Assembly: GCA_024704765.1 (NCBI GenBank)
Contig: JAKMXF010000017.1
Location: 1-22,163, forward strand
Length of the DNA: 22,163 nucleotides
From: Oopsacas minuta
Taxonomy: Eukaryota > Animalia > Porifera
Direction of reading: 5' to 3'
Shown: piece after piece, positions 2,098 through 22,063 of the stretch
How positions within the stretch are numbered: position 1 is the stretch's first letter
Layout of the letters: each line of letters begins with the position of its first letter
Notes under the pieces: model-generated
Database searches by the model: none
Seen by the model: the letters and a program-made list of their open reading frames with translations, nothing else
Told to the model about the DNA's origin: nothing
Made by a program: the position numbers and the translations under genes

Positions 2098-2712
2098 TAG
2101 AGGAAATAATCATGTAGTTAAGTTATATTAGGCCTCACAAATAAGTGGAAATAGTATCTGCATCGTGCCTCGAATTTCTTTTCATAAGAACAACAAATAT
2201 TCACAAAATGTTGTTGAAATAGCATATTTGGAATCAGCGTACAGTGAAACCCTGCTTAACGGAATTCGTGGAATAGCGGCCACCTCGAAATTATTTCGTA
2301 GAAAGGAAAATTCCTAGAACCGAAATAATATTGCAATATTATTATTTAAGTTTGTCGCTGAGTAATATTGTTTGTAATTGTAGATTTTCATAAATTGTAA
2401 AGTCAGGGTGAATAACCAAAAAGCTGTAGTACCAAAAATTAGGGCGAGATAAAAACCCTGGACCAAGAATAAGGGTTAGGTTTGTAACCAAACCGTGAGG
2501 AAAGAGAAAAATCCCCTGGAATAATTCCCGGATACTTTACCGTTCAACGAAATTTCTGGTCTGTTTACCATACAAAAGCGTATCAAACTTGTATTTCTAG
2601 CTAAGTCTCATAATTTCAAATAAAGGCCAATAGTTTACTTGTACCTCGAGTTAATTAATGTAGCCTATATTTTGCTGTGATTCGCCAATTACTAATCGAA
2701 GGTATAATATAC

Positions 2713-3012
2713 CTTCAGGTAATCCAATTCTGTTTGTTCCTCCTTAGTACGCTTAGCAGGAGGAGCTCCTGTCTGTTCCTTACTTCTCTTGGGAGCTACT
2801 TTAGCCTTCCCAAGCTCTTTCTCTAACAAAGATTTATCTGCTTTCTTCAAAGAGGAATATCCATTAATATTGTTAGCAGATAAATTGCTAGCTTCCAACT
2901 CTTCCCTCTTCTTCATGAAACACTCTACGTGATGCCAGCGTGGCGATTTAACAAACACTGGTCTGCTTCCAACACCATCAGAAGTTTCCATATGTCCAAG
3001 TCTAAGTGCATC
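2713..3012 (-). CDS. PARP1: PARP1 exon 4 (second half of zinc finger 2, basic NLS-like linker)
   Basis: DALRLGHM...PRWHHVECFMKKREEL...PKRSK...PPAKRTKEEQTELDYLK. 300 nt, AG/GT, phase 0/0. Confidence 0.95.
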
Positions 3013-4005
3013 CTATAAACACAAATTTATATTTGCAAATACAGGTAAAGCCTCCAAAGTGGCACCTACGGCACAATCCCATTCCACTGATTGATTTTCC
3101 TATACAAATATAACTTCTCGAACCTCTGAGATACAGCACATAATTATCTCCAGATGATGCCGTTTCTCGGGGGTTTAGCTGTATAAAGAAAATTTGTCTA
3201 GAACAGTTGTATATATTTAACCGATTATGGCCAGAAAAATGTTGGAATGTTTGTAGGTTAAAATTTGAGGAAATGTTGATGTTTACAGAATTGTGTAAAA
3301 TGTGATGCTAAAATTTAGTGTTCCGTTTCATTACAATAGTAACAGTTTGACTGTATTCAGGTGAAGAGAGTGGCATATACTACAACAATCCTGCCAGATC
3401 TGCTAATGCATGAAAATAAGGATGTTAATCCATGAAATATATTAAGGAAGGATCTCCATGCAACACTTAGTAAACAAACATCTATTTCTTGGTTACCCTT
3501 CAGGAATGAAGTACACTCTGTAAGTAATGGCTAAATAGTCTAGAGTCTACTGATGTTGGTAACGGCCAGGGATGGATCTATTTTCAAATTATCCTGAGGG
3601 TATTTTATTCAGATTCATTTTTCAGAGGGTGGCTTTGGTGAAACACTGGTAGCAGCTGGTAATATCCTGTACGATAGTTTATTAAAACTCGCATAACAGC
3701 TGGTCTATAATTTCCTAAATTTCCCTAACAAATTCCAGTATTACTAGTGCAAATTGAATATACATAATAGCAATAAGAATTCTATAGAAACATAGTTATA
3801 AAATTCCAGCCAATAGAATTGCTACAACAATTATATTAGATATACTAGAAAAGTGATTCGAAAGGTTTCAGGTAGTTTTTAGCTCAGGCTTAGCTACACG
3901 TGGAAGGTATACGTAATCTATGACTATTTAGATTTGTATAAAATGTATAAATAGAATAATATCGCAAAGGAAATTAGAAATTACAAAAATAGTAATAGAA
4001 TCTAA

Positions 4006-4746
4006 ATGACATCATCAGAATATCTGCTACAAATACTTATCGAAATAATACTATTGTTAGCAACATTTTCTATTGCTAAGATCCATTACAAATTTCTCAA
4101 CAACAATACTCCGAAACTAGAACCATATACAATTCCTATACAATCCAACAATTATAACACTCCGGATAGAAATGACGAAACAATCGCGACACACCCCACT
4201 ATAGATGAAATTAATGCTGACAATATTGATGCACCAGTATCACTATTGATAGTAATCATTGTTAATCAATTGGTCAACTTGTTCAACAGTTGGTTAACAT
4301 GGTTTGTGACTGTGGTGGAAAAGAGACAAACTCTATATCACGAGCAATTGAAGAACGATATCTTAGCAAATGAAATTACTGGAGAAGACTATGAATCGGA
4401 TAAAGAAACATCATCCAATTCTTTGGAATCAGAAATGAACTTATCCGAAATAAGCTCAATTCAGAAACAAGCTATGGAAGATACAGCAGGTTTATTCATC
4501 GCAAAAGCGCTCTGCTACTCAAATAAACAAGAATACAAACTTGCAGTCAAAATGTTAACGCGTGCAGCTAAATTAGAGAATCCAGTAGCACATTACAACC
4601 TGGGATTGATGTACTTCAATGGAAAAGGAGTAGAGAAAAATCTCCAAACAGCGCTCAATTGTTTTGTAAAAGCTTCGAGTAAAGGACATGCTAAGTCAAC
4701 TGAAAATGTGAAACTATTAAGAAGGCGAAATAATTTGTTAAAATAG
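4006..4746 (+). CDS. Intronless Sel1-like-repeat protein with N-terminal hydrophobic segment(s), nested antisense in PARP1 intron 3
   Basis: ATG-started 246-aa ORF. C-terminal AAKLENPVAHYNLGLMYFNGKGVEKNLQTALNCFVKASSKGH fits the Sel1 consensus. Hydrophobic stretches at about aa 6-26 and 78-103. Confidence 0.85.
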   Translation: MTSSEYLLQILIEIILLLATFSIAKIHYKFLNNNTPKLEPYTIPIQSNNYNTPDRNDETIATHPTIDEINADNIDAPVSLLIVIIVNQLVNLFNSWLTWFVTVVEKRQTLYHEQLKNDILANEITGEDYESDKETSSNSLESEMNLSEISSIQKQAMEDTAGLFIAKALCYSNKQEYKLAVKMLTRAAKLENPVAHYNLGLMYFNGKGVEKNLQTALNCFVKASSKGHAKSTENVKLLRRRNNLLK

Positions 4747-4833
4747 TTTAATATTTATTTATTGAATAATATTCAAGGAATGCTTGTTGAATTTTTAATA
4801 TTTGTTGTATTTTAATCATTAAATTAACATTAC

Positions 4834-4916
4834 CTTTTCAATCTTCTCTCCACAACCTTGACATAAACTTCTATTAGACTTTGCATATTCTGCAACATAA
4901 TCGTGATCTATCGCAA
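4834..4916 (-). CDS. PARP1: PARP1 exon 3 (first half of zinc finger 2)
   Basis: 83 nt, (V)AIDHDYVAEYAKSNRSLCQGCGEKIEK. AG/GT flanks, phase 1 in and phase 0 out, matching both neighbours. Confidence 0.93.
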
Positions 4917-5112
4917 CTAGTAAATTCAAATAAATGTTAATATGCAACCACAATAGTGAACATTGTAAATACGGAATACAAATTTCACGGAAATACATGT
5001 ATGGGTGTAAATATAGTTTTCAATTGCGATCATATCCTTCAAAATCGAGACAGGAAATATAAATTATTACAATCATTACAATGTTTTGCAATTCATACTT
5101 CAGCCAAAAGTA

Positions 5113-5198
5113 CAGTCGAAATCTGTTTTACTTACTAATCAGTTTTTTTCTTTCTTTATTTCCGTGGAAGAAATAGTAAGAAAAACCGGTTTCTACTG
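5113..5198. mobile_element. TA-flanked MITE related to 1963-2097
   Basis: TA cagtcgaaatctgtttt ... aaaaaccggtttctactg TA. Confidence 0.7.
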
Positions 5199-6087
5199 TA
5201 TTTGTTAACGAATAACAGGACTTCTAGGACTTCTCTTAACATTGGCTAAAATTAAAAGTTCTCAAATATTTCCTTTGCAAGTAATTCTACTTTCGTTATT
5301 CTGTACTGTGAAAATGAAGTGGAACCCTGCAGCTGGACAAACGCATGTAATTAATTATACTAAAAATAAAGACACGTGCCACAGTTCTTCAGTTTCCAGA
5401 AACTCTTACTTGGGAATTGGGAGCAACTAACTGTAATGCAGTTTCGTATAGTGATGATACGTTACATAATTATCACAAGATGAAACTAAATTACAATTTG
5501 TTGTTTCCAAATAAGAGTCCTTGGCAAAATTAGAGGCGTAGCCAAGATGCGGAACATGCTGCACCTACAATTACGTGTGCCAACCAAAATTGTAGATATA
5601 AATGTATCACAGGTGCGGTATTGCGGCACCAACGTGCTGACCTAGTGTCACACACTGACAACATTATAAATGTGCGAGATCCCTGCAAGTAGGACAATTA
5701 CTGGCTAAGGATTAGCTAGAATAAATAGCTAAGTTGTTTAATACGTATTATATATTTTGGTGACGTAACTTCTATTAGGCTGATTGCTGCAATATATATT
5801 CGGCATGAAAACAGAAGTTCTCGAATTGTTAATGAGAAATATCAGCTTAGTTGACCAAATTATGAATACTTGATAATTATGTGATTTATACAAGTCCAAA
5901 AATGTCAAAATGTCCTATTTCGAGATTAACCCAGAAGTATAATACGTAAAATAGATAATGTATAAGGTATTATACAACTTAGATAAATAGTAATAAAAAA
6001 TACATAAATAAAAGAATTAAGATTACTCTTAATATGACTACTACATATAACTGTGTGGTAAATAACAATATATTTCAGCAAACATAC

Positions 6088-6277
6088 CAGAATGTTTCCC
6101 ATGAGCTCCTGCAGAATTAGTCCCGTCCACTGACATTAATTTTTTCTGAATTTTTTCTTGATCTTCCCACTTGAGAGAATCGTATCCACCAACATCTGCT
6201 GTGCTCTTAATTGTTTTCTTTTTAAAGAAACAAGATTGATGGTACCAGTTGGGCACTTTACCGTCAAAATGTGGAGA
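6088..6277 (-). CDS. PARP1: PARP1 exon 2 (second half of zinc finger 1)
   Basis: tatag acceptor, then SPHFDGKVPNWYHQSCFFKK...YDSLKWEDQEKI. GTATGT donor, phase 1. Confidence 0.95.
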
Positions 6278-6993
6278 CTATAAGACCAAACAAACCAATA
6301 AGAAGAGATACAAAGTGATAAGTGAGATTTTAATAAAATAAAATACTCTACAGTCTGAATCATAAAACAAAGATGATTTCGAAATTCAAATTTAAATATA
6401 TTTTTCGGTTCTAGTGTATAAACCGTCACGCAGTGACCAAAAGCACTAAAAGAAGTTTAGCTGTTGTTTTGCTAAGTTTGAGGCACTAAGTGTTGAGCAT
6501 ACGGCAGTCCCGTAGCAGACTAGCAGGCGAGCACTGAGAAGCCCGCTAATAATTCAATAAAATTTTTTTGAGAATACGCACCTAAAAGTAACATCTCATT
6601 ATGCGTAACTAGCAGAATTCGTGTATAAAAAATTAGAACCTTTCAAAACCTAACTTACAAATGAATAATATTATGCAAATTCGGACTTTAAGCTAATTGG
6701 TGCAGGGTGTATAATGCTATTTTGAGTAAAGTAATATTCATACGGGAGGATTTATTTAGACACTAAATTACACATGCATGTGCGCATGCAGTTAATATTC
6801 AGTCTATATATTCTTTGTTGTGATTAATATTTGGCGACTTACAAATTAATGATAGTACACGTATATATGGTATTGGCTATTTTTCTATAATTAATCAAAC
6901 ACAAATACCCAACTGCTAGGATTTAAATACGTTGTAATGCTGTTATGGTTGTGAAGCATGAAGTCCAATAGTAATAGTTGTGTCATGACCAAC

Positions 6994-7107
6994 CTGTACC
7001 ATCTCAGCTATCCTCAGGCTATCTTTGAATATGTTACCTTTACAGCCTTTACAACCAGCTCGACTAGACTTAGCATACTCAGCTAGAAATTTAGATTTCT
7101 CCTCCAT
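6994..7107 (-). CDS. PARP1: PARP1 coding exon 1 (start codon, first half of zinc finger 1)
   Basis: Translates MEEKSKFLAEYAKSSRAGCKGCKGNIFKDSLRIAEMVQ, the EYAKS..CxxC motif of the PARP zinc finger. GT donor at 6993-6992, phase 0. Not in the ORF track. Confidence 0.95.
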
Positions 7108-7869: not shown

Positions 7870-8925
7870 TTAGTCGTCAATAGCTGTAATAGATTCTTCT
7901 GGAAGTAACTCTAACGTACTGATATAAGAGCAGAACTCTGTAAAGTCAACAGATCCATCTGAATTGATGTCAATTTTATTAAACAGTTCATGACCTTGAT
8001 TAAAATTATACTCTTCAATGTTGTATAGAAAATTTGAGAATTCTTTGCGAGTTATTTTACCGTCTCCATTCTTGTCAATCGTGTCAAACAGTATTCGTAT
8101 TTGCTGGTCATCTTCTGGATCCATGTTGCTAGAACGCGCTCTAGAGAACACAATGGGAGTATTTTCAGATGTGGAACGCGGAAACGAAGGTGTACTACCG
8201 CCTCCATCACCAGAATTATCACCAGAAGCTTGTGCTTTGGGAGTTGTAAAATTGGTAGCAGGATTAAGTGTGTCATCATCAGAACACTTAGTAGAACTAG
8301 CAATAATACCGCTTGTATGCACTGATGCGCTTTTCTTAACTTTCTTCATGGGCGAGGTCTTAAACTTTACAACAGCTAATGTAGCTCTCCGTATACTATT
8401 CCATCCAGGATGTTTCTCACACTCAATGCTCGTACTCATAGCAAGTCTGAACTTTTCGCTACCTTGTTCCCCCAAGGTTCCTTGCTGTAGCAGGCTAATG
8501 CTCTTCCGCTTAAACTTACTGTTTACAGGCGCTGTACTTATCCGCTGTCTGAGAGGCAATCCAGAAAACTCAAATACGTCAGAATCATCAGTGAATTCTT
8601 TTGTAGTGACAGACTTCTTGGCAACATTGAGAGGAGTTTTGGCTTGAATAGGAGGAAAGGAGAAACGTTCTCCTTTAGGATTAGGCGCTAGATCGATACG
8701 AGCTGTCTGCTTTGCATCAAACTGTATAATCTCAATACCACTAGTATCAGCCTTGAAGTGTAGGAATGCAGCAAGATTTCCATGAGTCCCTACGTAGTTA
8801 GGAGCAGAGAATACTGTGATTACCATAGGGTAGTAGTAAGGTTTATGCCAAGTGTCCTTGTAGTGAGTCATGTAACCAAGATCTTTGGATTGATGAGCAC
8901 GTATTATACCGTGTAGTTCATTAAC
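7870..8925 (-). CDS. Calcineurin-A-like PPP phosphatase, terminal exon with two C-terminal EF-hands
   Basis: ctttag acceptor extends the listed ORF by VNELHGIIRAHQSKDLGY. RAHQ and ITVFSAPNY are PPP motifs. EF loops DKNGDGKITRKE (8041-8076) and DINSDGSVDFTE (7936-7971). Confidence 0.9.
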   Translation of the reverse strand, partial: VNELHGIIRAHQSKDLGYMTHYKDTWHKPYYYPMVITVFSAPNYVGTHGNLAAFLHFKADTSGIEIIQFDAKQTARIDLAPNPKGERFSFPPIQAKTPLNVAKKSVTTKEFTDDSDVFEFSGLPLRQRISTAPVNSKFKRKSISLLQQGTLGEQGSEKFRLAMSTSIECEKHPGWNSIRRATLAVVKFKTSPMKKVKKSASVHTSGIIASSTKCSDDDTLNPATNFTTPKAQASGDNSGDGGGSTPSFPRSTSENTPIVFSRARSSNMDPEDDQQIRILFDTIDKNGDGKITRKEFSNFLYNIEEYNFNQGHELFNKIDINSDGSVDFTEFCSYISTLELLPEESITAIDD

Positions 8926-8972
8926 CTAAAGAAAAGGTGGTAATGATACGAGTTACTAAATCATACTGAACT

Positions 8973-9527
8973 GTGAATATATGTTGTGATTCTCTTGTCT
9001 GTCTGTCTGTGTCCTTTTTCAAGGAAATGATAAATCATGGCATGCAATATTGCATATTTGGCATAAACGGACACTTAGTCTCTTGGCAAGTATGGTTTGT
9101 AAATTTTGTAGAAAAAGACAAATTTTGTCGTTTAACATGTTCTAAAAAGCCGCTAACTTCAAATTTAGCCACAAGCTATTGTACTGTAAATTTCAAGAAG
9201 GTAGCTACAATAGTACTATGCATTTGCAGACAATTTCACTTTATCCATTTTACATATTTCTTGGTAACTATGGTAATACTCAATAAAGCCCAAATAAGAG
9301 CAAAAGTATATAATATCTTTAGACTTGAGATATCAACTACAAACTCATTAATTGAAATGACGTCGAGTTTAGGGAATGATAATGTATCTCTACGAACGAT
9401 ACAGAGACAGTATGGAGGGCTTATATTGGAAAATGACTCATTGGAAGAGGACCCGAGACCTGGTTCTCCGTTCACGAAAGTATCACTGGAGAATATCGAA
9501 CCTGCTGACTTAGAAAATTCCTCATAA
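8973..9527 (+). CDS. Candidate nested antisense ORF/terminal exon in the phosphatase intron (hydrophobic segment plus acidic Ser/Pro tail)
   Basis: 184 stop-free codons in AT-rich DNA, with acceptor-like sites at about 9023 (ctttttcaag) and 9229 (tttgcag). No recognisable domain. Confidence 0.35.
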   Translation: MNICCDSLVCLSVSFFKEMINHGMQYCIFGINGHLVSWQVWFVNFVEKDKFCRLTCSKKPLTSNLATSYCTVNFKKVATIVLCICRQFHFIHFTYFLVTMVILNKAQIRAKVYNIFRLEISTTNSLIEMTSSLGNDNVSLRTIQRQYGGLILENDSLEEDPRPGSPFTKVSLENIEPADLENSS

Positions 9528-10695
9528 ATAATAAAACTAGCAGAGGCACTGAAGCAAATGATATCAGTGATTAACCCCAGGGAAATGTCATCAAATGCAG
9601 TAAATGCTATGTATATTCTTGATATGTCGTATAATGTTAAATCGAGTACATTTAACTTGTGGCCAATTTGAAGTTAGTGGAATACTTAGAACATAGGACA
9701 AAAATAACATAGCACCTCTTGTATATCTCACCTAAAACTACAGTACCGAATGGCCTCTCTTGTATATTGAACTTGAGTAGAATATTTCAGGGCAACGGAA
9801 ACTAAATTCGAAAAGACAAGTTGAAAAGCTAATAAATGTATTTATTACCTCTTAAAATAGTTTCAAAATTAGAACAGTTCTCTGACATATTTGCTGTAAT
9901 GGTATTTGTCATTACTTACTGTCCATATTTACTAACCATTTCCTGGCCGCAATAACGTCATCTGATTGCTTATTCTAATAGATTTATTCTGGCCAAAATA
10001 TCACGTAAATATTATAGAAATTACTAGAATTCCATATGACTGATTTAACACATCCCTGGTCCAAATCTATCGATCAATACCATTAGCCCACTACTTTAGC
10101 GCATAGAATGCTATGGACGAACTTATATTCTTAAAAAAAGATAGAAATCGGCAAACTGTCGCTTCCCTTCACATCTAATAACAAGAAGCGTGAAATATGG
10201 AGAGGGTAGATACTTTCATGAATTTAGAGCTAGATAACGTTTGGATGGCCTAGTAGCTGGATGTGAAATAACCTGAGCATTAAGCGCTCCTCAGTTTTTG
10301 AGCGCGCTCTCGCTCTGGGCTCCCTCCCTGAAAAGGAGCGGCGCTCCCACCTCCGATCCTTAATCAGAAAAGGAGCACACTCCGGCTGCCGCTCCAGGAC
10401 AAACAGAGCGGACTCCAATCGCGCTCCTTTTCATTCTCTCAGATTTTCGTTATATTTGTATTTTAAGCAGTCAGGATTGAATTTAACATTCGGGAAATTG
10501 CTAAATGTGCAACTTCAAACCATTTCAATATATTGTGAATTATACAAAAGTGTCCCAGCATCCACTTTTGATTCCAAGAATGCTGAATTTTATGCATAAT
10601 AACGATGAAATTTGTAAATTGTTTGCAATTAAATAGGAGCGGGCTCCTTTAATGCTCTGGAAATAACTTTTGAATCAACAATAAACTTGACTGAC

Positions 10696-10817
10696 CTTAA
10701 GAAATGTGTGTATAGAAGCGTGTCCATAAAGAGAAGAACATCCTCTAACTATATTTGGCAGATAATCTAGCTCTAAGAACTCTTCATAATCTGCATCTGT
10801 CTTAATATTCATCTCAG
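10696..10817 (-). CDS. Calcineurin-A-like PPP phosphatase, penultimate exon (5' exons absent from this segment)
   Basis: cctag acceptor, EMNIK...DYLPNIVRGCSSLYGHASIHTFLK, GTCAGT donor in phase 0. The N-x-VRGCS motif is characteristic of calcineurin A (NTVRGCSY). Confidence 0.85.
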
Positions 10818-10823
10818 CTAGGA

Positions 10824-10824
10824 N
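10824..10824. other. Single-N contig junction
   Basis: Phosphatase acceptor on the left, right half of a MITE on the right. Confidence 0.9.
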
Positions 10825-10968
10825 AGAAAATATGTCGCTAAATTCAATTTGTCGTATCCGACAGGTCGTTATACCCGAGGTATGGTGTGTGCAGAATAAT
10901 GCTGCGAGATTCTGGGTAAGCAAAATGAGTCGTTATAAGCGATTTGTCGTTAAATCCAATGTTTACTG
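10825..10968 (+). mobile_element. Right half of TA-flanked MITE B
   Basis: tgtcgttaaatccaatgtttactg then TA. Internal gtcgttata motifs are shared with the left half. Confidence 0.9.
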
Positions 10969-11327
10969 TATTATTGAAATACAAAATTGGTTAAGATAGG
11001 TTAGAACGAAATTAGAAAGCTTTACGAAAGATTGTTATGATTAAATAAATTCAAAGAAGCAGTGACGTCATGGGGATCATAGACCCCAATCTTAGCAGAG
11101 TTTAATTTTTTATTGAAATAAGAGTGCTACCCATTCAAAAGTACCTGTACATCAAAACTACATAGGGCCTCTCATACCGCCAATCTGTTACAGTAGTAAT
11201 ATAAATAATCGAAGGTGGCTCTTCTTACAAGCAAAATTGAACAGATTACTTAATTAACCCGGCTATGACTTAGAATTTTATACTGTTCTTGTCTCACTGC
11301 TTGTTTGTCATATAAATGAGTACTAAC

Positions 11328-11449
11328 CAGTTTTCTCTAAATACTTGGCAGCGAACTCATTGACAGCTTTGGGTAGTGAGAAGAAGTCTTCCAACTTGCT
11401 ATTACCCACATTCGTTCCTACACGGCCCCACGCACGAAATATATAATAT
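11328..11449 (-). CDS. PARP1: PARP1 exon 10 (WGR motif)
   Basis: YYIFRAWGRVGTNVGNSKLEDFFSLPKAVNEFAAKYLEKT. Phase 2 in, phase 1 out. Confidence 0.95.
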
Positions 11450-11548
11450 CTAGACAAGATAGAAGTTAACTAGAAATAGACAATCCTTGCATGTGCAAAC
11501 ATAGAATACTACAACAGTAAAAATATGAAATATTGGATCTGAACTTAC

Positions 11549-11796
11549 TTCTTCTTAGTATCATGTTCCAACAATTGTAGCTTGTAATAAGAATTCATTC
11601 CATTAAACAAGTCCACCATTCCTAGGGTGGCACTGTAGATCACATCTCCTTGTTTATAGATATGGCAGTCATGCTCATGTCCTGAATCAGGGTCTACAGC
11701 TCCTCCTCCCTTTACAGTCATCTTTGCCATTTTGGGAATTGACTTTTCGCTTTTAGCAGAGCTCTTAAATACACCAGACTTGGTTAACATTTGAGG
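11549..11796 (-). CDS. PARP1: PARP1 exon 9 (start of WGR domain)
   Basis: PQMLTKSG...[15 protein letters not shown]...[32 protein letters not shown] donor, phase 2. Confidence 0.96.
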
Positions 11797-12194
11797 CTAT
11801 CGGATATAGAATATGAAACATATTATTAATATAGATCAAAAGATGAAACAGTAATGATCTATGCAGCACTAATATGGGGGTAGAGGCTGGAAATAGAAAC
11901 TACTAAAGTACAAGGAGTTGCGAAAAAAACATTTGCAGATTGAAAATGGTGAGAAATTGAGGTCCTTTGGGATAAATTTTCGAGGACTAATAGTCTGGTT
12001 TCGCTAATTCCTCGATTGCAATAAGTTTGAGATAGAAAGTATATGGTCATACGATCAAAATTGCAATCTGAAAGTATCATAACGCATAAATTGTAGTCTT
12101 GTTCGATTTTTGCACGCCTAGAGGTATAAGAGATGAAATGTATATGCCTGTAGGAGTCCCACATACGCCTGCTGAGTCGTATACCGATTCAAAG

Positions 12195-12215
12195 TATATA
12201 TATATATATATATAT
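12195..12215. repeat. (TA)n microsatellite
   Basis: Directly visible in PARP1 intron 8. Confidence 0.95.
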
Positions 12216-12253
12216 CTAATTCGAATTAAAAATAACCAACACAGAATACTTAC

Positions 12254-12487
12254 AACTGCTCCCCAATCTGATATCTTATTGGTTAACACTTTAGACAAGG
12301 CATCTCCAGTTTTTGATTCTTCTAAGAAACTAACTGACAGGATTGGAATGCTGTGTTTCTCAGCTGTCTTGATCTTAGCAGACTTTTTAGTAACTTCATT
12401 GGGATTACTGAGTACAATCGTTGTTTGTTGGGAGACAGAGTCTACAACCACAGCTCCCAATGAAGTTAGCTCTGCAGTAAGTTCACC
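12254..12487 (-). CDS. PARP1: PARP1 exon 8 (BRCT domain)
   Basis: GELTAELTSLGAVVVDSV...IPILSVSFLEESK...KISDWGAV. 234 nt, GTAAGT donor. Confidence 0.92.
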
Positions 12488-12985
12488 CTAGAATCAACAA
12501 TTAATATCTAAATAATTACTAAATCATCCTGATTGGTTAATAATTAAATACTTAGACGAGGGGACTTTTGTAATTCGTGATGACCAAAAGATTCGTATAT
12601 AAACTAACCATAACATTTACAAAATGTATTCCTATCCTTTGATCATGGGTAGTCAACCTTTTAAACCCTGCCGGCCACATGAATGTTTAAAGATCTGACC
12701 AATATTGTTAACATTTATTATGGCACGTAAGTGTACTATATACAAATTTTAAATGTATGATTAATTAATGTGATTTCTGAGGTTGTTTTGATTGGAAATT
12801 AGGAATTGGGTAAATCACGTTGTAATGCTTGATGTCATGGATGTGGCTGGAAATGACGGTGTGGAACCTAAAATTATACATAATGGTGCAGTATGAAATG
12901 TAAGATGACTAAAGGTTTACAGATCAACAAGGTCAGTAATACGTATTATATTGTTCTACTATACTAGAGATATAGTAATCCTCAC

Positions 12986-13157
12986 CTTAGTTCTCTCCAA
13001 TTTCCCTACAATACAAACAGAGAATCCATTCAAAGGTTGAGAAGTTTCTGTCTCCATCGCTTCTTGAGATCCTAATGATGAGGATGCGCTGGGAGCAGAA
13101 GCAGTTAGTTTAGGGAAGATGCGCTGTCCTACACTGTAACTCAGTTTCATAGACTTT
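12986..13157 (-). CDS. PARP1: PARP1 exon 7 (automodification linker, start of BRCT)
   Basis: KSMKLSYSVGQRIFPK...SQPLNGFSVCIVGKLERTK. Phase 2 in, phase 0 out, AG/GT. Confidence 0.9.
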
Positions 13158-13331
13158 CTAGGAAAATGGAATGTTTTCTAAACAACTCTGGGTTCGTAAA
13201 TGAATAAAATAGAATGGCAAACATATGCATCTACTGATAATAATTTGGCAACAGGACAATATTACAAAGATTTCGGGATAGGAGGTTATAAGCCATAGAA
13301 ACTTATGTCACGCGCCATGCATGAGCTGACC

Positions 13332-13718
13332 GATAGACTACTACATAACACAGATAGGAAAGTAACCGAGAAACGAATAAAACAGAGGCCATTTGTATAA
13401 ATCTCCTAAAAGTTAAATCAATCCTCCAAAGTTCGTGAAATTAACTTTTTTAGGGTAAAAAATGTAAAAATATTTGAGAAAATAGTCAACTTATATAAAT
13501 GTTAACGTCATCGCATAAATGGCGCCTAAACGGATGAAAGATGGCCGTTAGAACTTTTAGGTATTCTTAACTGATTTCTTACATTTTCTAACCCTAAAAA
13601 AAGTTCAATTCACAAACTTTGAAGGGTTAATTTAACTTCTATGAGATTTATACAAATAGCCTCACTTTTTTATTCGTAGCTCGGCTACTTTCCTATCTTT
13701 ATGATATAGTAGTCTATG
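13332..13718. mobile_element. Foldback MITE with about 140-bp imperfect TIRs and 7-bp TSD (P-superfamily-like)
   Basis: Arms (g)atagactac...gataggaaagta...atttgtataaatctc / reverse complement ending gtagtctatg. Flanks gctgacc / gctggcc. Confidence 0.8.
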
Positions 13719-14039
13719 GCTGGCCATACACGATGCAACTTCGTTGATCTTGTATCGTGTACTGTAAATTAAATTCCATGAAAAATTGCATGCAAATGTT
13801 GTATGGAAGTATGAACATGTTCTAGCTTACTGCATTACTTGCACGAAAAAGTATTTTTAGCCAACATTGAATCATTCATAACAATAAATTTGTTGGTACA
13901 ATTCCTACATATATCTTGGTCAAATTTCCGCGCCCCGTTATCGCGTTTTCGTGCTATATAGAGTAAATTATAGGATTCGGCCAATAATTGGTTCCATTCT
14001 AGATAAATAAATATACAAATCCTTCCCACATAAACTCAC

Positions 14040-14211
14040 ATTTCAGGAATTTCTTTAACTTCTTCTGGAATGTGAAACTTCTTCCTCTTAGGTTCCTTTG
14101 TAGTATAAATGCACTTGCTCCATTCAGAAAGAGCACCCTTACACACATAGTAACCTTTGGGTGAGTATATCAATGTTTCTGATTTACAATCAGGACAAGG
14201 ATGTAGGGACC
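14040..14211 (-). CDS. PARP1: PARP1 exon 6 (PADR1 zinc ribbon)
   Basis: (G)SLHPCPDCKSETLIYSPKGYYVCKGALSEWSKCIYTTKEPKRKKFHIPEEVKEIPE, with four Cys ligands. Phase 1 in matches exon 5; GTGAGT donor, phase 2. Confidence 0.92.
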
Positions 14212-14469: not shown

Positions 14470-15007
14470 NNNNNNNNNNNNNNNNNNNNNNNNNNNNNNN
14501 NNNNNNNNNNNNNNNNNNNNNNNNNNNNNNNNNNNNNNNNNNNNNNNNNNNNNNNNNNNNNNNNNNNNNNNNNNNNNNNNNNNNNNNNNNNNNNNNNNNN
14601 NNNNNNNNNNNNNNNNNNNNNNNNNNNNNNNNNNNNNNNNNNNNNNNNNNNNNNNNNNNNNNNNNNNNNNNNNNNNNNNNNNNNNNNNNNNNNNNNNNNN
14701 NNNNNNNNNNNNNNNNNNNNNNNNNNNNNNNNNNNNNNNNNNNNNNNNNNNNNNNNNNNNNNNNNNNNNNNNNNNNNNNNNNNNNNNNNNNNNNNNNNNN
14801 NNNNNNNNNNNNNNNNNNNNNNNNNNNNNNNNNNNNNNNNNNNNNNNNNNNNNNNNNNNNNNNNNNNNNNNNNNNNNNNNNNNNNNNNNNNNNNNNNNNN
14901 NNNNNNNNNNNNNNNNNNNNNNNNNNNNNNNNNNNNNNNNNNNNNNNNNNNNNNNNNNNNNNNNNNNNNNNNNNNNNNNNNNNNNNNNNNNNNNNNNNNN
15001 NNNNNNN
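14470..15007. other. Assembly gap (538 N)
   Basis: N run separating the segments that carry PARP1 exons 6-10 and 11-13. Confidence 1.
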
Positions 15008-15130: not shown

Positions 15131-15842
15131 CAGTGGAACATCTGAATTACGGTCACCCTTGGACTCAGGTGAATGGCCGTAACTTCGGGGTATCAATATA
15201 ATTTGGTACTAGAAATGGCTGGAAGTCGGAATTGTGGGGTGTCTGTAATTCTGAAATAAATTAATGTTAATGTCTATTGGAAATTTGGAATTCAACCGGG
15301 ACAAAGAAGCGGGCTCCGAAAAACAGGTTTTAGCACCCACTGAATCCGCCAGGAAGCTAAAATTGTTTGAAAAAATGCAATAAGATCTAGTGAACTGCTC
15401 ATGAAGCTATACCAGTTTGTAATAACTACTACGTAATTATATATGTCATCCTCTAATAATAAACTATGTATATTTTCGACCACAATCTAAAATCTAAATA
15501 AATCTATACAAACTACTTAGTTAATCTATTTTAGCAAATTCTGCAAAGCAATTGATAAACCAATTTTATTTAAGTCAGAATTAACCAAACTAATTCAGAC
15601 AAGAAATTAGTTCAATTATTTAGCCATTTAAAACCTGTTAAATTATTAACAAACATTGACCAATCAAAAGTGGAGCGAAATGTTGGACTCCCTCTATGTT
15701 GTTCGAAGTCATTTTGAGGCACACCTGGGTTGGTTGGAGTGGGGATCTACACTGGATTTTTATTTATACCTTCATGGGTGTTTCGGCAACCAATTTTCAC
15801 GCGACTAACTTTCGCCTTTCCGCTTGGGATCTAATTTCTTAC

Positions 15843-16073
15843 CTCTAATAGCTTAAGGTCAAAAGAAGAGTGAGTAGATCCGTGAGTATTAGAAATGAAC
15901 TCTTTGATCATATCGAATTCATCAGATTTCTTATCAACTACCGTTAGATCAGCCTTCAGTTTTTCATAGTAGACATCAATTGGGTCAGTTTCTTCCTGCT
16001 CCTTCTTACCTCCGCTTAAGAGTGAGTATGTGACCTCTAGCTCAAGCAAACTATCCAACATCTCGCTCTTTTC
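15843..16073 (-). CDS. PARP1: PARP1 exon 13 (end of regulatory domain, start of ART domain)
   Basis: EKSEMLDSLLELEVTYSLL...DPIDVYYEKLKADL...NTHGSTHSSFDLKLLE. GTAAGA donor, phase 0. Confidence 0.96.
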
Positions 16074-16154
16074 CTAGAAATATGTAACAGTAGGTATCGC
16101 TTATATGTACACCCTTTGGATTAGCAAATCTCTTTTAATCACCGATACATATAA

Positions 16155-16310
16155 CAGCGGTTCCCAACCTGGGGTCAATGGACCCTTGGTAGTCCAAGGA
16201 CGACAGCAGGGAACCCACAAAATCTATTGCAGACTATGGGAGGTGGTCCACAGAATGTTCTCAAATTGGTATAGGAGGTCCACTGGTGAAAAGGGGTTGG
16301 GGACCGCGAG
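16155..16310. mobile_element. Degenerate hAT-type MITE
   Basis: cagcggttcccaacct left end, degenerate ggttggggaccgc right end. TSD not preserved. Confidence 0.55.
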
Positions 16311-16705
16311 CTTATTAAAGGAACACTAATCATTTATCTAAAGAAATAATAAATACATAGCGTTTGACTATGAATGAAAATTATAATTTGAGGATAGAAA
16401 TGGCGAAATCGTATGCAGGGTGGGCCAAAAATCAGAACCCTAACACTTAGCTTCGAATATGGATAATATTTAGAAAGAGGAACAAAATCTTATCGTTGAA
16501 TTGGCGTGCAAGACGAATACAATTTTTTCCCCACCGAACACAGAACTAAACATTGCGCGATCGTATTAAATATGCAAGCACAAGATGATAAAAACCGAAA
16601 AGAATTGGGTAAGAAAGAACTGAGGCGGCCATATAGGAAAGACCAAGCTAAAAAGGTTAAGAACCACTGTGTTAAATATAATTATCATGGTAATTAGAAT
16701 CTTAC

Positions 16706-16924
16706 TTTAATAACTTCAGCATTGACAAGTAGTGGTGGAGATTCCAAACCAAAATCGTGTGGAATTAAAGTATAGAATTTGTTAGACAAATCTAAGAACC
16801 GTCCTTTGTGTGTTGTAGCATCAGATCCTGAATTTATTAGAGTCTCCAGTTCCTTAAGGGCAGAGTAAGCTTCTTTTATCTGATTCTTGGATAATTTACC
16901 CAAAGGCATCTTATTCAGATCAAT
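16706..16924 (-). CDS. PARP1: PARP1 exon 12 (regulatory domain)
   Basis: IDLNKMPLGKLSKNQIKEAY...LDLSNKFYTLIPHDFGLESPPLL. 219 nt, AG/GT. Confidence 0.96.
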
Positions 16925-17515
16925 CTAAATCAGTTGTATAAGTAATACAATAGCTAAATAATTCTGGGATCTAACGATCTAGCCAAAGTGACGTTTATGA
17001 CATTTGACCGTTTCACATGTTGGTTCTAATGGAAAATTTGAATTGTTGAAAATGGATGCGTGAAGCTATCACAAAAATTTGCAATTTGCTATTTGCAAAG
17101 GTGTTAAACTCATTAACTAGATAATTAGATGTAAAAAATATTGGAGATCAAATATTTACAAAAATAGTGTGAATATTCAAATTTGAATTCATATATGAAA
17201 TCTACTCAATACAGTAGAAATTAATCTTAGCTATAAATAGGTTTTTTCCAAATTTAGCACAAATTGATTATTAAAGAATATTTTTTGCAGAATTCCCCAC
17301 TTAGAGGTGAATTTCAATGGAGTAAGGCATAATTATCTCCAGAGTATGCCCCATTCCTCGTTTATAGAGTTTGCCCTGTACTATTATGTGAATTTAGAAG
17401 CATTCCCATCATTTCTTCCTGATATATAGCCACTTTTGGTTTGGACCCCACCTTTGAAAATGGAAAAAGTTGCCAAAAATGGAACAGTAACAATGTTTTT
17501 TCGAATTTTCATTAC

Positions 17516-17706
17516 CTCCATCTCGAGGAGAGATTGCTTCATGGCTTGTACATCAAATATCATCCGTATAATACTCTGTATAGCCGGATCTAATTTAGAT
17601 TTAGACCCAGCATCAGCAAAGGTAGGTTCATCTTCATCTCCATAGTCTATCTCTAGCGGAAAAAACTTGCCAGGCACCTTAGAATATGTTGTACCCCAGA
17701 TATTTC
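17516..17706 (-). CDS. PARP1: PARP1 exon 11 (end of WGR, start of helical regulatory domain)
   Basis: (G)NIWGTTYSKVPGKFFPLEIDYG...SKLDPAIQSIIRMIFDVQAMKQSLLEME. Phase 1 in matches exon 10 (KT-G-N). Confidence 0.95.
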
Positions 17707-17973: not shown

Positions 17974-18325
17974 ATTATACGCCTTATATATTGGTATTTC
18001 AACATTTCCCTTTATAGAGTGTGGATTCATATACTCAGACACATCAGGTACTTCACTACATCCACATATCCGTCCTCAGGCGTTGCGCCTTCTCAGCTAT
18101 AATCCAGCATAATTGAATTTTCAGTTCAGTTGCCAAAATAATTGAATTCAGTTGGCTAGATAATATTACATTCAGCCCAAAATCTATCGGGGTTCTGGTG
18201 CATTTAGGTATCTACACGGGGGTCAGGGGCGTGCCCCTCCTGAAAAGAACAAAACAAATAATCCTGAGCTGCACTGCCAGTCTGTCGGCTGGACATTTTT
18301 CTAAGATTCGGTAGCATTGGTACCA

Positions 18326-18607: not shown

Positions 18608-18855
18608 TTAATAGAAACCGCTCTTGTATTGAAAATCTATCTTTAGTAAGTAGCACATTTTGACTTGAGCTTCGTCATAAACTATAAATTCATTGTAGAG
18701 TAGCGAGGAGGAGCCTGTATAAGAGCTTGTAGCAACGCCCATTGGAATGTCCACACCCTCAGGAGTAGTACGTAAGCCTGAAATATCAGGGGCTGTCCTA
18801 CCGATTCCTTTGGTGCTGTGAAAGCCTGCGGGTAGTTTCTGAATATATTTGGATC
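18608..18855 (-). CDS. PARP1: PARP1 exon 15 (last coding exon, catalytic Glu, stop)
   Basis: (G)SKYIQKLPAGFHSTKGIGRTAPD...SLLYNEFIVYDEAQVKMCYLLKIDFQYKSGFY*. TAA at 18610-18608. Confidence 0.96.
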
Positions 18856-19143
18856 CTAAGAGAATAAAATGCCTGATATATTACCAAACGCAATTTGGGT
18901 CAATGCAATGTTACAATCCCTGAATTAATTGCAACACTATGCCAAACTTGTCTCAAATAAGGTAGAACCGCATCCCACGAGTCTTGGATCCTACTTCCTG
19001 TGTAATATAGTATACTCTCTCTGGGAATGCCCTCACGGGGGAAATACTATGTAGTAGTCTTCCCCAGGAAACTCAACACGCTTAGTTAATTTCCCTCTAT
19101 TCAAAAACAATTGAAACAATTGAATCTACGTATTTAAGTTAAA

Positions 19144-19625
19144 GGGATAACTGAATAAGACCGAATGGAACACAAGACTGAAAATAATAAACTAGAGGTC
19201 TAAAGCAGTGGTTCCCAAAAACGGGACCGAAAATTTTCCTGAAGTCTTAATGTTACTAACATTAATGACACTTAATTTTATCGGAATCGTTGATTGGACC
19301 TCAATTCTGGTAACCTAAAATTCTTAAATTCATTAAAATGGACATTTTTTCTTGCTAGGTTGCTTCACGACTGAGGCGCCGGTACAACAATCGCTTCAAA
19401 TCCAGAAAGACCCCGTTGGTGAGGTCGCAAGGGATTAAAAATTGTATAATGGAGTCGAGAACCACTGGTCTAGAGGATTTTGAGCTTTTATCTACACCTA
19501 TATAGACTTCGGGTTAGGGTCGGGTCGGGTTTTGAAAAGTGGACCCAATTCCAACTCTGATTCGGTCTTATTCCAGTAGTGACTATTATTCGGTACTGTT
19601 CCATTCGGTCTTATTCAGGTTTCCC
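19144..19625. mobile_element. TIR element with GGG termini hosting the hAT MITE
   Basis: gggataactgaataagaccgaatggaaca vs the reverse complement of 19597-19625 (27 of 29 match). No clean TSD. Confidence 0.7.
19206..19467. mobile_element. hAT (Charlie/Buster-type) MITE
   Basis: TIR cagtggttc / gaaccactg, with 8-bp TSD gtctaaag / gtctagag. Confidence 0.85.
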
Positions 19626-20197
19626 AAGTCAAACAAGATATTTGTGTATTTAAGTTCATTGTTTGAAGTGTAGTGAAGAGCTTTTGTTTCGGAATTGTTG
19701 TCTAGATCTATGACTACTTCCTGATTGTTGGTCAAAATCTGGACAATGCATTCTGCAAAATTCCAACAAATGCATACTGCAAGATTCAGAAATGTATAAT
19801 ACTAATTCGGACAGATGCATCAGTCGTACAAATGTATACCAATTCGGACAAATGCATGCGCCCCCATCATGACAGGAATATGAGTCGCGCAATTGACAAC
19901 ATACAAAATTCTAATAATTATCAACATATACAGTCGGACAATTGCATGTCGCCAATACGAGAGCGTATTGATGAATCTATTATGTGTTTAAGTTCATTGT
20001 TTGAAGGCCACTATAGGAGGATGAAACTATATAACACCGGCAATTTATGAAGAAAATTTTGGGTGGTGTTGCCATCACTTTTGCCACTTCCTTAAAATTA
20101 ACTACTCTCTCAAGAAAGTTTAACATCGAAAATAATTTATTCAACTTAATTCGTATTGTGTAATACGGTATGACACAAGTGACAATTCACAACTTAC

Positions 20198-20492
20198 CAG
20201 TGAGTTCATACATATTGCCAAGAGCTACTTCACATAAAAGCATAAGACCAGTCGGGTTTGAGGGTGTGGTTCTGCAATAATTGGCAGATTTTGATGCCAT
20301 ATCTGCGAAATAAAGTCCCTTCCCAAACATGTATCCTGTTGAGGGGGCCTCCGGTGGCGCTATTCTCAGTCCTTGTGATATAATACCTCCGAAGTTAGTC
20401 GTTCTAGAGCCGTGCCAGAGGAGCTGACGGTTGTGTAGCTCGTTAAAAGGTTTGTATCTCTTATTTTCACCATTTCTCTTCAGCTTAAAGAG
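20198..20492 (-). CDS. PARP1: PARP1 exon 14 (catalytic ART domain, PARP signature)
   Basis: [73 protein letters not shown]...[13 protein letters not shown]. Contains the His and Tyr of the H-Y-E triad. Not in the ORF track. Confidence 0.97.
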
Positions 20493-21592: not shown

Positions 21593-22044
21593 ATGGACCC
21601 TGATCAGCCCTCCTTCCGGCAGATCAGAACAAACAAGGGAGGACAAAAGCTGTTAGAAGGAGGATACCAATATTTGACGCACAGGAGAGTTGGAAAAAAT
21701 TCACATTGGCAGTGTGAGCAGAGAGGAGAGTGTAAAGCAAGGGTTCATACGAAGGGAATGGAGATAGTGAAGCGTACGAATGAGCATCTGCATGCACCTG
21801 ATGTGCAGGCTACGGCCTGCTGTGAGATAAAGGCCAGCATCAAGAGGAAAGCACGAGACACACAGGATAGCTCACACCAGATAATCGGTGAGGGTATGCT
21901 AACAGCATCAGAGGGTACTGCTGCTAAACTACCTAAGCTGGACAGCCTGAAGCGGACGATACAGCGTCAGCGTGCAAGTGTATTATCAGCTCCAGTGCAG
22001 CCTACCGCCCTAGCAGAGTTGGTTCTACCTGCAGAATACCAGCG
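21593..22044 (+). mobile_element. N-terminal part of a FLYWCH-domain MULE/Mutator-like transposase, truncated by an adapter artefact
   Basis: KGGQKLLEGGYQYLTHRRVGKNSHWQCEQRGECKARVHT...NEHLHAP is a FLYWCH/WRKY-like C2H2 finger, followed by SLKRTIQRQR...P. Higher GC than the flanks. The DDE domain is not in the window. Confidence 0.75.
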
Positions 22045-22063
22045 AGATGTGTATAAGAGACAG
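22045..22063 (+). other. Nextera/Tn5 mosaic-end adapter contamination
   Basis: Exact AGATGTGTATAAGAGACAG, translating as DVYKRQ in the ORF track. Confidence 0.98.

What the first reader, a model, noticed from the sequence alone, without database searches (positions are those of the whole stretch)
7870..10817. Calcineurin-A-like phosphatase carrying its own EF-hand pair instead of a clear calcineurin-B-binding helix
Seen: two spliced exons give NIVRGCSSLYGHASIHTFLK-VNELHGIIRAHQSKDLGY...MVITVFSAPNY...NLAAFLHF...IIQF, a long tail, then two canonical 12-residue EF loops. Established: N-x-VRGCS is the calcineurin (PPP3) signature, whereas the EF-hand-bearing PPEF/RdgC family has RGGGxxFG here. Calcineurin A normally lacks EF-hands, and its IRQF is followed by the PHPYWLPNFMDVFTWSLPF helix that binds the EF-hand B subunit. 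Here that helix is at most vestigial (APNPKGERFSFP). Inference: a single-chain, self-sensing Ca2+-regulated calcineurin-like phosphatase, analogous to the way CDPKs fuse kinase and sensor. It is the best candidate for a new system in this window. The N-terminal metal-binding exons are not visible, so activity is unproven.
Basis: partly seen in the sequence, partly recalled or inferred. Interest (0 to 1): 0.75.

Follow-up and report, generated by a model that had tools for sequence, protein, structure and literature searches.

The report
Sponge calcineurin-like phosphatase with own EF-hands
This is the real, transcribed 3' half of a glass-sponge gene for a calcineurin-related phosphatase that has its own calcium-binding EF-hand pair instead of a binding site for the calcineurin B subunit. 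The protein type is unstudied, but it is not new to the databases: it also occurs in the other sponge classes, ichthyosporeans and red algae.

Summary
On the minus strand, an exon fragment (10696-10823) is spliced to a last exon (7873-8925). Together they encode the end of a PPP catalytic domain, a roughly 200-residue linker and two canonical EF-hand loops. An RNA-like run shows the GT..AG splice and covers the EF-hand part.

The N-terminal exons are missing only because this contig is a chimeric scaffold. A single N at 10824 cuts the exon, and a Nextera adapter sits at 22045.

Four related glass-sponge genomes carry the complete three-exon gene with GDxHG, GDxVDRG, GNHE and HGG intact.

In a maximum-likelihood tree the gene falls in a well-supported clade (99/99). 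That clade lies inside the calcineurin (PP2B) superclade, outside canonical calcineurin A, and far from a PPEF-like protein.

Members lack the calcineurin-B-binding helix. They keep a probable homologue of the calcineurin autoinhibitory segment (F..A...D...E.HPGW), followed by a basic amphipathic helix and a C-terminal EF-hand pair.

The clade includes all four sponge classes, three ichthyosporeans and red algae. Their database names are automatic: "calcineurin A", "PPP3CA-like" or "uncharacterized". I found no paper describing it.

The calcium-switch mechanism is inferred, not shown.

The parts
10696..10823 (-). 3' fragment of the middle exon. It encodes ..LAEMNIKTDADYEEFLELDYLPNIVRGCSSLYGHASIHTFLK, including the phosphate-binding Arg of the RGCS motif. 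It is truncated at its 5' side by the scaffold join.
   Evidence: Translation. The donor GT is at 10695-10694. Related loci continue upstream through WSDP without an intron. The X4 contig continues past 10823 as MWSDPLLEE.
10824..10824 (.). Single N: a false scaffold join that cuts the exon.
   Evidence: DNA contigs of runs X1-X3 stop at 10823, and the letters that contigs carry before 10825 differ from the window. 10864-11047 is a very high-copy repeat. No metal-binding motif occurs anywhere in the window.
8926..10695 (-). Intron of 1770 nt with GT..AG ends.
   Evidence: A joint in run X4 skips exactly 1770 nt with CT..AC ends on the plus strand. Depth in X4 falls from 400-860 on exons to 13 in the intron.
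7873..8925 (-). Last exon, 351 codons: end of the catalytic domain, linker, autoinhibitory-like segment and EF-hand pair.
   Evidence: Open frame. It is 48-62% identical to the same exon in five related genomes.
8716..8925 (-). C-terminal 70 residues of the PPP catalytic domain (IIRAHQ with the metal-binding His, VFSAPNY, IIQF).
   Evidence: phmmer against PDB aligns residues 2-69 to calcineurin A 271-333.
8356..8451 (-). Autoinhibitory-like segment F159..HPGW175, running into a basic amphipathic helix (to about K190).
   Evidence: Strongly conserved across the clade, with three columns (E, P, W) identical in every member. hhalign against the canonical calcineurin autoinhibitory segment gives probability 90.7%, E 1.2e-6. 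With whole tails compared it is the only hit, at E 2.4e-4.
7921..8106 (-). EF-hand pair, with loops at 8041-8076 and 7936-7971.
   Evidence: Pfam EF-hand_7 E 4.5e-14. It is the only confidently folded part of the exon model, pLDDT 81-94. It resembles calmodulin lobes (about 20 bits each) more than calcineurin B (4-9 bits).
7870..7872 (-). Stop codon.

Best explanation
The region is the 3' part of a genuine, expressed glass-sponge gene. The assembly statistics fit Oopsacas minuta. The gene encodes a roughly 660-residue Ser/Thr phosphatase of the PPP family.

The protein belongs to a conserved clade that is part of the calcineurin (PP2B) superclade but lies outside canonical calcineurin A. From N to C terminus its build is:
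- a catalytic domain with a variable insert between GDxHG and GDxVDRG;
- no calcineurin-B-binding helix;
- a disordered linker;
- a segment homologous to the calcineurin autoinhibitory segment (F..A...D...E.HPGW);
- a basic amphipathic helix;
- a second linker;
- a calmodulin-like EF-hand pair.

Inferred mechanism. At rest the autoinhibitory segment occupies the active site, as it does in calcineurin. When Ca2+ loads the two EF-hand loops, the pair clamps the adjacent amphipathic helix of the same chain. This pulls the inhibitory segment out and switches the enzyme on without calcineurin B. The logic resembles that of CDPK kinases.

Shown: the gene model, its expression, clade placement, motif conservation and absence of the B-binding helix. 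Inferred: catalysis in this species (its exon 1 is not in the assembly), autoinhibition, and the EF-hand/helix contact.

Odds: identity and architecture about 0.9; Ca2+ regulation through the cis EF-hands about 0.6; the specific helix-clamp step about 0.4.
For: - Gene model and splice.
- Complete three-exon orthologues with all metal motifs in L014-L017.
- Conserved synteny, with the phosphatase followed by PARP1 on the same strand in L013, L015, L017 and the window.
- Large HMMER search and accession names of the full-length relatives.
- Word search with the Sphaeroforma catalytic domain: clade members first, then a long run dominated by canonical calcineurin A at about 35-37% identity.
- Careful ML tree: the clade at 99/99 includes the glass-sponge exon-1 rows, the PP2B superclade is at 99/97, and the sponges group in an order that fits sponge phylogeny.
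- No FTWSLPF-type helix in any member, while RGCS is present in all.
- Autoinhibitory-segment homology.
- Foldseek with the Corticium model: the top 36 hits are all calcineurin A at 35-41% identity.
- EF-hand loops are canonical and conserved across the clade.
Against: - Exon 1 and the 5' part of exon 2 are absent from this assembly. Metal ligands in this species are therefore inferred from relatives at about 60% identity.
- The autoinhibitory homology rests on a 37-41 column match. It reaches 90.7% probability only when the segments are pre-cut, and 43.8% when whole tails are compared. A PDB profile search with the segment found nothing.
- The models give low confidence for the linker and show no docking that I could read.
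- The tree has a single PPEF-like outgroup and no plant PP7 or BSU1.
- The four subclades of the PP2B superclade form an unresolved polytomy.
- No biochemical data exist for any member.
Confidence: 0.7

Rival explanations
1. The EF-hand pair is not the switch. The enzyme would be activated in trans by calmodulin binding the basic amphipathic helix just after HPGW, as calmodulin activates calcineurin. The cis EF-hands would serve targeting, dimerisation or a structural role, like the high-affinity lobe of calcineurin B.
For: The helix after HPGW (W..IRR..LAV.KFK and its equivalents in other members) looks like a calmodulin target (by inspection). One EF-hand loop is degenerate in the Corticium lineage, with Gly at loop position 1. 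PPEF uses both calmodulin and its own EF-hands (PMC11962071).
Against: hhalign found no homologue of the canonical calmodulin-binding segment in the linker. Both loops are canonical in the glass sponges, ichthyosporeans and red algae.
Confidence: 0.25
2. It is a divergent orthologue of PPEF/RdgC, the known phosphatase with EF-hands.
For: It has a PPP catalytic domain followed by C-terminal EF-hands, with an insert in the catalytic domain.
Against: The PPEF-like protein P0097 (IQ motif, NGDFVDRG, RGAG) groups with PP5 at 100/99, outside the 99/97 PP2B superclade that holds this gene. Fly RDGC (8JFW) does not appear among the 60 listed PDB matches to exon 1, which are calcineurin, PP2A, PP1, BSU1, Ppz1 and one other chain. 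No IQ motif is visible at the N termini of the relatives. The motif here is RGCS, not RGxG.
Confidence: 0.03
3. In this genome the locus is a dead 3' fragment, either a partial duplicate or a fusion behind PARP1 exons, and not a working gene.
For: No N-terminal exons are in the window or anywhere in the assembly. PARP1 exons lie directly upstream on the same strand.
Against: The break is a single N next to a high-copy repeat. The RNA-like contig continues upstream in frame as MWSDPLLEE. The frame is open and conserved. The scaffold is demonstrably chimeric, with an adapter at 22045-22063. Relatives have the complete gene in the same neighbourhood.
Confidence: 0.04

Closest known systems
Calcineurin A (PPP3C / PP2B catalytic subunit)
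   Same: The catalytic domain lies in the same superclade (99/97). It has the highest sequence identity of any solved PPP, 36-41%. The PN..RGCS motif is shared. A C-terminal segment with the spacing F-3-A-4-D-4-E-2-x-P aligns to the autoinhibitory segment. Both are presumably Ca2+-activated by relief of autoinhibition.
   Different: It lies outside the canonical clade (99/98). It has no calcineurin-B-binding helix, and no homologue of the calmodulin-binding segment was detected. It has a C-terminal EF-hand pair on the same chain, a variable insert between GDxHG and GDxVDRG, and RAHQ instead of RAHE. The genome also has an ordinary calcineurin A, with the B-binding helix, on another contig.
PPEF / RdgC (PPP7C), phosphatases with EF-hands
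   Same: It is a single chain with a PPP catalytic domain and C-terminal Ca2+-binding EF-hands. [quoted passage not shown]
   Different: It belongs to a different catalytic lineage, since PPEF groups with PP5. It has no N-terminal extended IQ motif. The inhibitory element here is C-terminal and calcineurin-like. It has one EF-hand pair rather than an EF-like plus EF-hand tandem.
CDPK / CCaMK (kinases fused to a calmodulin-like domain)
   Same: The logic is analogous: enzyme, autoinhibitory junction, then a cis EF-hand sensor.
   Different: There is no homology of the enzyme domain. The analogy is only one of design and is untested here.
Protist RGCS-type phosphatases with C-terminal EF-hands (for example Plasmopara halstedii XP_024581330, named both 'PP2B catalytic' and 'phosphatase with EF-hands')
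   Same: They are in the same PP2B superclade and also carry C-terminal EF-hands.
   Different: They form a separate clade (98/94). They lack the HPGW motif, and many are much longer (900-1240 residues).

Membership tests
PPP-family Ser/Thr phosphatase | N-terminal metal-binding motifs GDxHG, GDxVDRG and GNHE, plus HGG | tested here: inconclusive
   They are absent from the window and from the whole assembly, because exon 1 is missing. They are present and invariant in the orthologous exon 1 of four related glass sponges.
PPP-family Ser/Thr phosphatase | C-terminal catalytic residues: Arg of the RG motif, His of R-A-H-Q/E, and SAPNY | tested here: met
   VRGCS, IIRAHQ and VFSAPNY are read directly from the window and align to calcineurin A 271-333.
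Calcineurin A (PPP3C) | Catalytic domain groups with calcineurin A in a PPP tree | tested here: inconclusive
   It is inside the PP2B superclade (99/97) but outside the canonical calcineurin A clade (99/98). The relation among the four subclades is unresolved.
Calcineurin A (PPP3C) | Calcineurin-B-binding helix (..LPNFMDVFTWSLPF..) after the catalytic domain | tested here: not met
   The pattern was found in seven of the nine canonical sequences scanned, and reading the tails shows variant forms in the other two. It was found in no member of this clade. The window has PNPKGERFSFPP at that place.
Calcineurin A (PPP3C) | Calmodulin-binding segment | tested here: not met
   Profile-profile comparison of the whole linker with whole canonical tails aligned nothing to the calmodulin-binding segment. 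A non-homologous calmodulin site is not excluded.
Calcineurin A (PPP3C) | Autoinhibitory segment near the C terminus | tested here: met
   hhalign gives probability 90.7%, E 1.2e-6 on pre-cut segments. With whole tails it is the only hit, at E 2.4e-4 and probability 43.8%. It is a short motif, so support is moderate.
PPEF / RdgC | Catalytic domain groups with PPEF (the PP5/PPEF/PP7 group) | tested here: not met
   The PPEF-like P0097 groups with PP5 at 100/99, apart from this clade. Only one PPEF-like reference was available.
PPEF / RdgC | N-terminal IQ / extended-IQ calmodulin-binding motif | tested here: not met
   No IQ-type motif is visible at the N termini of the four glass-sponge exon-1 sequences (by inspection). 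It cannot be read in the window itself.
PPEF / RdgC | C-terminal EF-hands | tested here: met
   Pfam EF-hand_7 E 4.5e-14.
PP2B-related 'HPGW' clade (unnamed; Sycon XP_065185606, Sphaeroforma XP_014149223, Porphyridium KAA8491789 and others) | DY.EFLELDYLPN..RGCS, then F..A...D...E.HPGW.S(L/I)R, then a C-terminal EF-hand pair, with a catalytic domain inside the clade | tested here: met
   All three sequence features are read in the window and align with members. Exon 1 of the glass-sponge orthologues falls in the clade at 99/99. The last-exon profile finds members at E about 1e-25.

The most novel reading that the evidence does not exclude
This clade may be an ancient, undescribed third kind of Ca2+-regulated PPP phosphatase: a single-chain calcineurin relative. 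It would keep the calcineurin autoinhibitory segment but replace both calcineurin B and calmodulin with one cis EF-hand pair. It would have been present in the ancestor of animals and been kept, among animals, only by sponges.
Probability: 0.4. Interest if true: 0.7.

Novelty: new variant of a known kind. Interest (0 to 1): 0.55.

Why it matters
Calcineurin is the textbook Ca2+/calmodulin-dependent phosphatase and always needs a separate EF-hand subunit. PPEF is the only studied PPP with built-in EF-hands, and it belongs to another lineage.

A calcineurin-side clade that carries its own sensor and keeps the autoinhibitory segment would show a second, independent route to Ca2+ control of a PPP. 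It offers a simple one-chain system for studying relief of autoinhibition. It should also be insensitive to FK506 and cyclosporin, which need the A/B interface.

Its distribution is patchy: all four sponge classes, ichthyosporeans and red algae. It was not seen in other animals in these searches. This bears on what Ca2+ signalling parts the first animals had and later lost.

The practical limit is that the sequences are already public under automatic names. The novelty therefore lies in recognising and testing the class, not in finding the gene.

Tried and rejected
- Motif scan of all six frames of the window for GDxHG, GDxVDRG, GNHE, WSDP and HGG found none. Pfam Metallophos over the whole assembly, and exon 1 of a relative used as a query, found only other PPP genes. 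The 5' exons are simply not assembled.
- G000 contigs C11 and C266 were checked as possible 5' halves. C11 is the ordinary calcineurin A, and C266 holds PP2A/PP4-type genes.
- A PDB profile search with the HPGW segment gave no calcineurin hit, only chance matches at E above 0.7.
- Complex prediction was run with the EF-hand pair (residues 262-351) against the autoinhibitory-plus-helix peptide (150-205) and 2 Ca. It returned no verdict (score 0.02). This is not evidence either way.
- AlphaFold model of the last exon alone: only the EF-hand pair is confident. In the full-length Corticium model the catalytic domain and EF-hands are confident but the linker is not.
- VIA-align gives Z about 30 for calcineurin and PP2A alike and covers only residues 1-333. 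The fold therefore does not discriminate, and the position of the inhibitory segment could not be read.
- The protein atlas search gave only generic Metallophos clusters.
- Nine literature searches, including one by accession numbers, found no description of this clade.
The tree uses exon 1 of relatives as its own rows.
Full report
**What is in the sequence**

The gene lies on the minus strand. Window 7873-8925 is one open frame of 351 codons ending at a stop at 7870-7872. It begins VNELHGIIRAHQ. It runs through VFSAPNY and IIQF, which mark the end of a PPP catalytic domain. A linker of about 200 residues follows. The frame ends with two canonical 12-residue EF-hand loops, at 8041-8076 and 7936-7971. 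Pfam EF-hand_7 scores E 4.5e-14.

The acceptor AG is at 8926-8927, behind a pyrimidine tract. The upstream exon ends at 10696 with AAG|GTCAGT and encodes ...DYEEFLELDYLPNIVRGCSSLYGHASIHTFLK.

**Expression and splice**

Four runs from one sample hold the stretch. Three behave as DNA. The fourth, X4, behaves as RNA: its depth is 300-860 on exons and 3-13 in introns. One X4 contig joins 8925 to 10696, skipping 1770 nt with GT..AG ends. X4 also has spliced joints in the neighbouring PARP1 exons. It covers 7919-8387, so transcripts include the EF-hand region. The run's type is not on record. "RNA" is my reading of the depth and splice pattern.

**Why the N-terminal exons are invisible**

The window is a whole 22-kb contig of the assembly. 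It holds no GDxHG, GDxVDRG, GNHE, WSDP or HGG in any frame.

The frame stays open and matches relatives up to 10823 (X-L-A-E-M-N-I-K), and position 10824 is a single N. In related genomes the same exon reads ...EPPLNG..CDVMWSDPLLEELLAEMNIK... without interruption. The X4 contig continues beyond 10823 with letters that translate to MWSDPLLEE. The DNA contigs of X1-X3 stop at 10823, and 10864-11047 is a very high-copy repeat.

The contig is chimeric in other places too.
- PARP1 exons are all on the minus strand, but their four blocks are in reversed order. The blocks are separated by N at 10824, 14470-15007 and 17973.
- An exact 19-nt Nextera mosaic-end adapter sits at 22045-22063.
- The letters that follow the adapter repeat 18035-18110. 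This is the mark of a circularised mate-pair junction.

A search of the assembly with exon 1 of a relative finds only other PPP genes. The 5' half of the gene is therefore simply unassembled. A second contig, C138, starts inside the same exon and carries a diverged copy of the intron before turning into an unrelated hydrolase gene.

**The complete gene in relatives**

The last exon finds seven ORF-type proteins, 45-60% identical, on long ENA contigs. I fetched five of these loci.
- L014, L015, L016 and L017 show a three-exon gene. Exon 1 runs from Met to HGGIG, about 231 residues. It has GD(I/L)HG, GDYVDRG and GNHE, and a 30-residue insert between the first two motifs. Exon 2 runs from KKLTS to FLK. 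Exon 3 runs to the stop.
- In L013 the first exon lies beyond the fetched flank.
- In L013, L015 and L017 the next gene downstream on the same strand begins with a PARP zinc finger. The window is the same: zinc-finger exons lie at 7107-6943, 6256-6041, 4998-4819 and 2991-2692.

The assembly has 61,460,524 bases in 365 contigs. The Oopsacas minuta paper reports 365 scaffolds and about 61 Mb (PMC10280926). Earlier notes of this scan also call the genome a glass sponge.

**Relatives beyond glass sponges**

I searched 1.84 billion cluster representatives with a profile of six last exons (A1). Only the glass-sponge ORFs matched end to end. Among the next hits were full-length phosphatases that match both the catalytic end and the tail. 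Their sources are:
- Sphaeroforma arctica XP_014149223;
- Creolimax and Ichthyophonus;
- Sycon ciliatum XP_065185606, named "PPP3 catalytic subunit alpha-like";
- Porphyridium purpureum KAA8491789, named "Calcineurin subunit A";
- Timspurckia.

A word search with the Sphaeroforma catalytic domain adds Corticium candelabrum LOC134193213, Geodia barretti ("PP2B ... gamma isoform") and several unnamed entries. After the clade comes a long run dominated by canonical calcineurin A at about 35-37% identity. No protein named PP5, PPEF or BSU1 appears among the 120 listed, although their lengths were admissible.

All clade members share these features:
- GNHE(T/S/C)R.M;
- DY.EFLE(L/I)D(Y/F)LPN..RGCS;
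- F..A...D...E.HPGW.S(L/I)R followed by a basic amphipathic helix;
- a C-terminal EF-hand pair;
- no ..FTWSLPF.. helix, which is the calcineurin-B-binding helix.

**Phylogeny**

I built a careful ML tree with 50 rows, 346 columns and the LG+C20+F+G4 model.
- It was rooted on PP5 plus a PPEF-like protein (P0097, which has an IQ motif, NGDFVDRG and RGAG).
- PP1 plus PP2A branch next.
- A PP2B superclade follows at 99/97. It has four subclades whose order is unresolved: canonical calcineurin A (99/98, including this genome's own calcineurin exon); a small RGCG group with a B-helix-like motif; a protist clade with C-terminal EF-hands (98/94); and the HPGW clade (99/99).
- The four glass-sponge exon-1 rows sit inside the HPGW clade (100/100). 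They are next to the group that holds Geodia (98/77).
- The sponges group together (82/74), beside the ichthyosporeans and red algae.

Rows left out: tandem-duplicated PP2A artefacts (P0172, P0173, P0180) and a rotifer calcineurin with a duplicated segment (P0175).

The tree has three limits. It has one PPEF-like outgroup. It has no plant PP7 or BSU1.

The genome also encodes an ordinary calcineurin A, with the PHPYWLPNFMDVFTWSLPF helix, on contig C11. Its best match to the PPEF-like protein is PP5.

**Structure**

phmmer of exon 1 against PDB ranks calcineurin A first, at 101 bits. PP2A scores 90 and PP1 scores 85, so the margin is small. Foldseek with a model of the Corticium member gives calcineurin A for the top 36 hits (35-41% identity), then PP5 and PP2A. 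VIA-align gives Z about 30 for calcineurin and PP2A alike, so the fold does not discriminate.

The EF-hand pair scores like a calmodulin lobe, about 20 bits each. It scores 4-9 bits against calcineurin B in the same fusion chain. It is therefore not a fused B subunit.

**The linker**

The strongest conserved block outside the domains is F159..W175 in the window's last exon. Its spacing, F-3-A-4-D-4-E-2-H-P, is the same as in the canonical autoinhibitory segment (F..A/V...D...NE..P), which I located in canonical calcineurins from fungi, apicomplexans, a chromerid, a dinoflagellate, a rotifer and this sponge.

Profile-profile comparison of the pre-cut segments gives probability 90.7% and E 1.2e-6. 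Because I chose those segments by eye, I repeated the comparison with the whole linkers against the whole canonical tails. The only hit is the same pair of segments, at E 2.4e-4 and probability 43.8%. Nothing aligned to the calmodulin-binding segment. A profile search of PDB with the segment found no calcineurin. I take the homology as probable, not proven.

**Mechanism**

This part is inferred. The autoinhibitory-like segment would block the active site. Ca2+ loading of the cis EF-hand pair would make it grasp the amphipathic helix that directly follows HPGW and withdraw the inhibitor.

The main rival is activation by calmodulin in trans on that same helix. A complex prediction of the EF pair with the peptide gave no verdict. 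The models leave the linker at low confidence.

Because the calcineurin A/B composite surface is absent, I expect no inhibition by FK506-FKBP12 or cyclosporin-cyclophilin. This follows from established knowledge of how those drugs bind and was not tested.

**Novelty**

This is a calcineurin-side phosphatase with its own EF-hands and no B-binding helix, and none of its stated refuters applies in full. But the architecture is already present in public proteomes of sponges, ichthyosporeans and red algae under automatic names, and a separate protist clade has a similar build.

I found no paper that describes or tests it. The two PPP-evolution papers, the PPEF structure paper and the Oopsacas genome paper that I searched do not describe it.

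I therefore class it as a new variant of a known kind, namely Ca2+-regulated PPP phosphatases. Interest is moderate. The value lies in recognising a conserved, untested class and in its patchy, sponge-restricted distribution among animals.

Noticed in passing
window 22045-22063 (+), with 22064-22140 repeating 18035-18110: An exact 19-nt Nextera mosaic-end adapter is left in the contig, and the letters after it repeat a stretch 4 kb upstream. This is a circularised mate-pair junction assembled as if it were genome.
   Followed up: partly
window 2692-7107, 11323-14173, 15831-17677, 18608-20330 (all minus): PARP1 exons lie in four blocks that have the right strand but reversed order (Zn1/Zn2; Zn3/BRCT/WGR; helical domain; catalytic end). 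The blocks are separated by N at 10824, 14470-15007 and 17973. In relatives PARP1 simply follows the phosphatase.
   Followed up: partly
window 4006-4746 (+): A 246-residue ORF with Sel1-like repeats lies on the opposite strand between PARP1 zinc-finger exons. Relatives have a Sel1 ORF in the same nested position (L014 17129-17827, L015 17555-18253).
   Followed up: no
G000 contig C138 (L008 1-1597): A second contig starts inside the same phosphatase exon (32 codons, 100% identical). It carries a diverged copy of about 1 kb of the intron, then switches to an alpha/beta-hydrolase-like gene. It is either a haplotig or another chimeric join.
   Followed up: partly
window 10290-10640 and 10864-11047: These are high-copy repeats inside and next to the intron. 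Summed contig depth reaches about 100,000 in run X1, and many alternative joints occur. They are the likely cause of the misjoin at 10824.
   Followed up: no
window 21593-22044 (+): An ORF with a FLYWCH-type zinc-finger look (..W.CE....C.ARVHT......H.H) runs into the adapter. It is probably part of a mobile element or a separate gene.
   Followed up: no
L014 1127-3436: In one related glass-sponge contig, a 769-residue ORF with a Bacillus_HBL (haemolysin BL-like) Pfam hit lies 4.6 kb upstream of the phosphatase gene.
   Followed up: no
L019 (G000:C318:261000-264500): Two intronless PP2A catalytic-subunit genes lie in tandem. One has the usual DYFL end. The other has a changed RG motif (GWGSGYTFG) and a different tail.
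   Followed up: no
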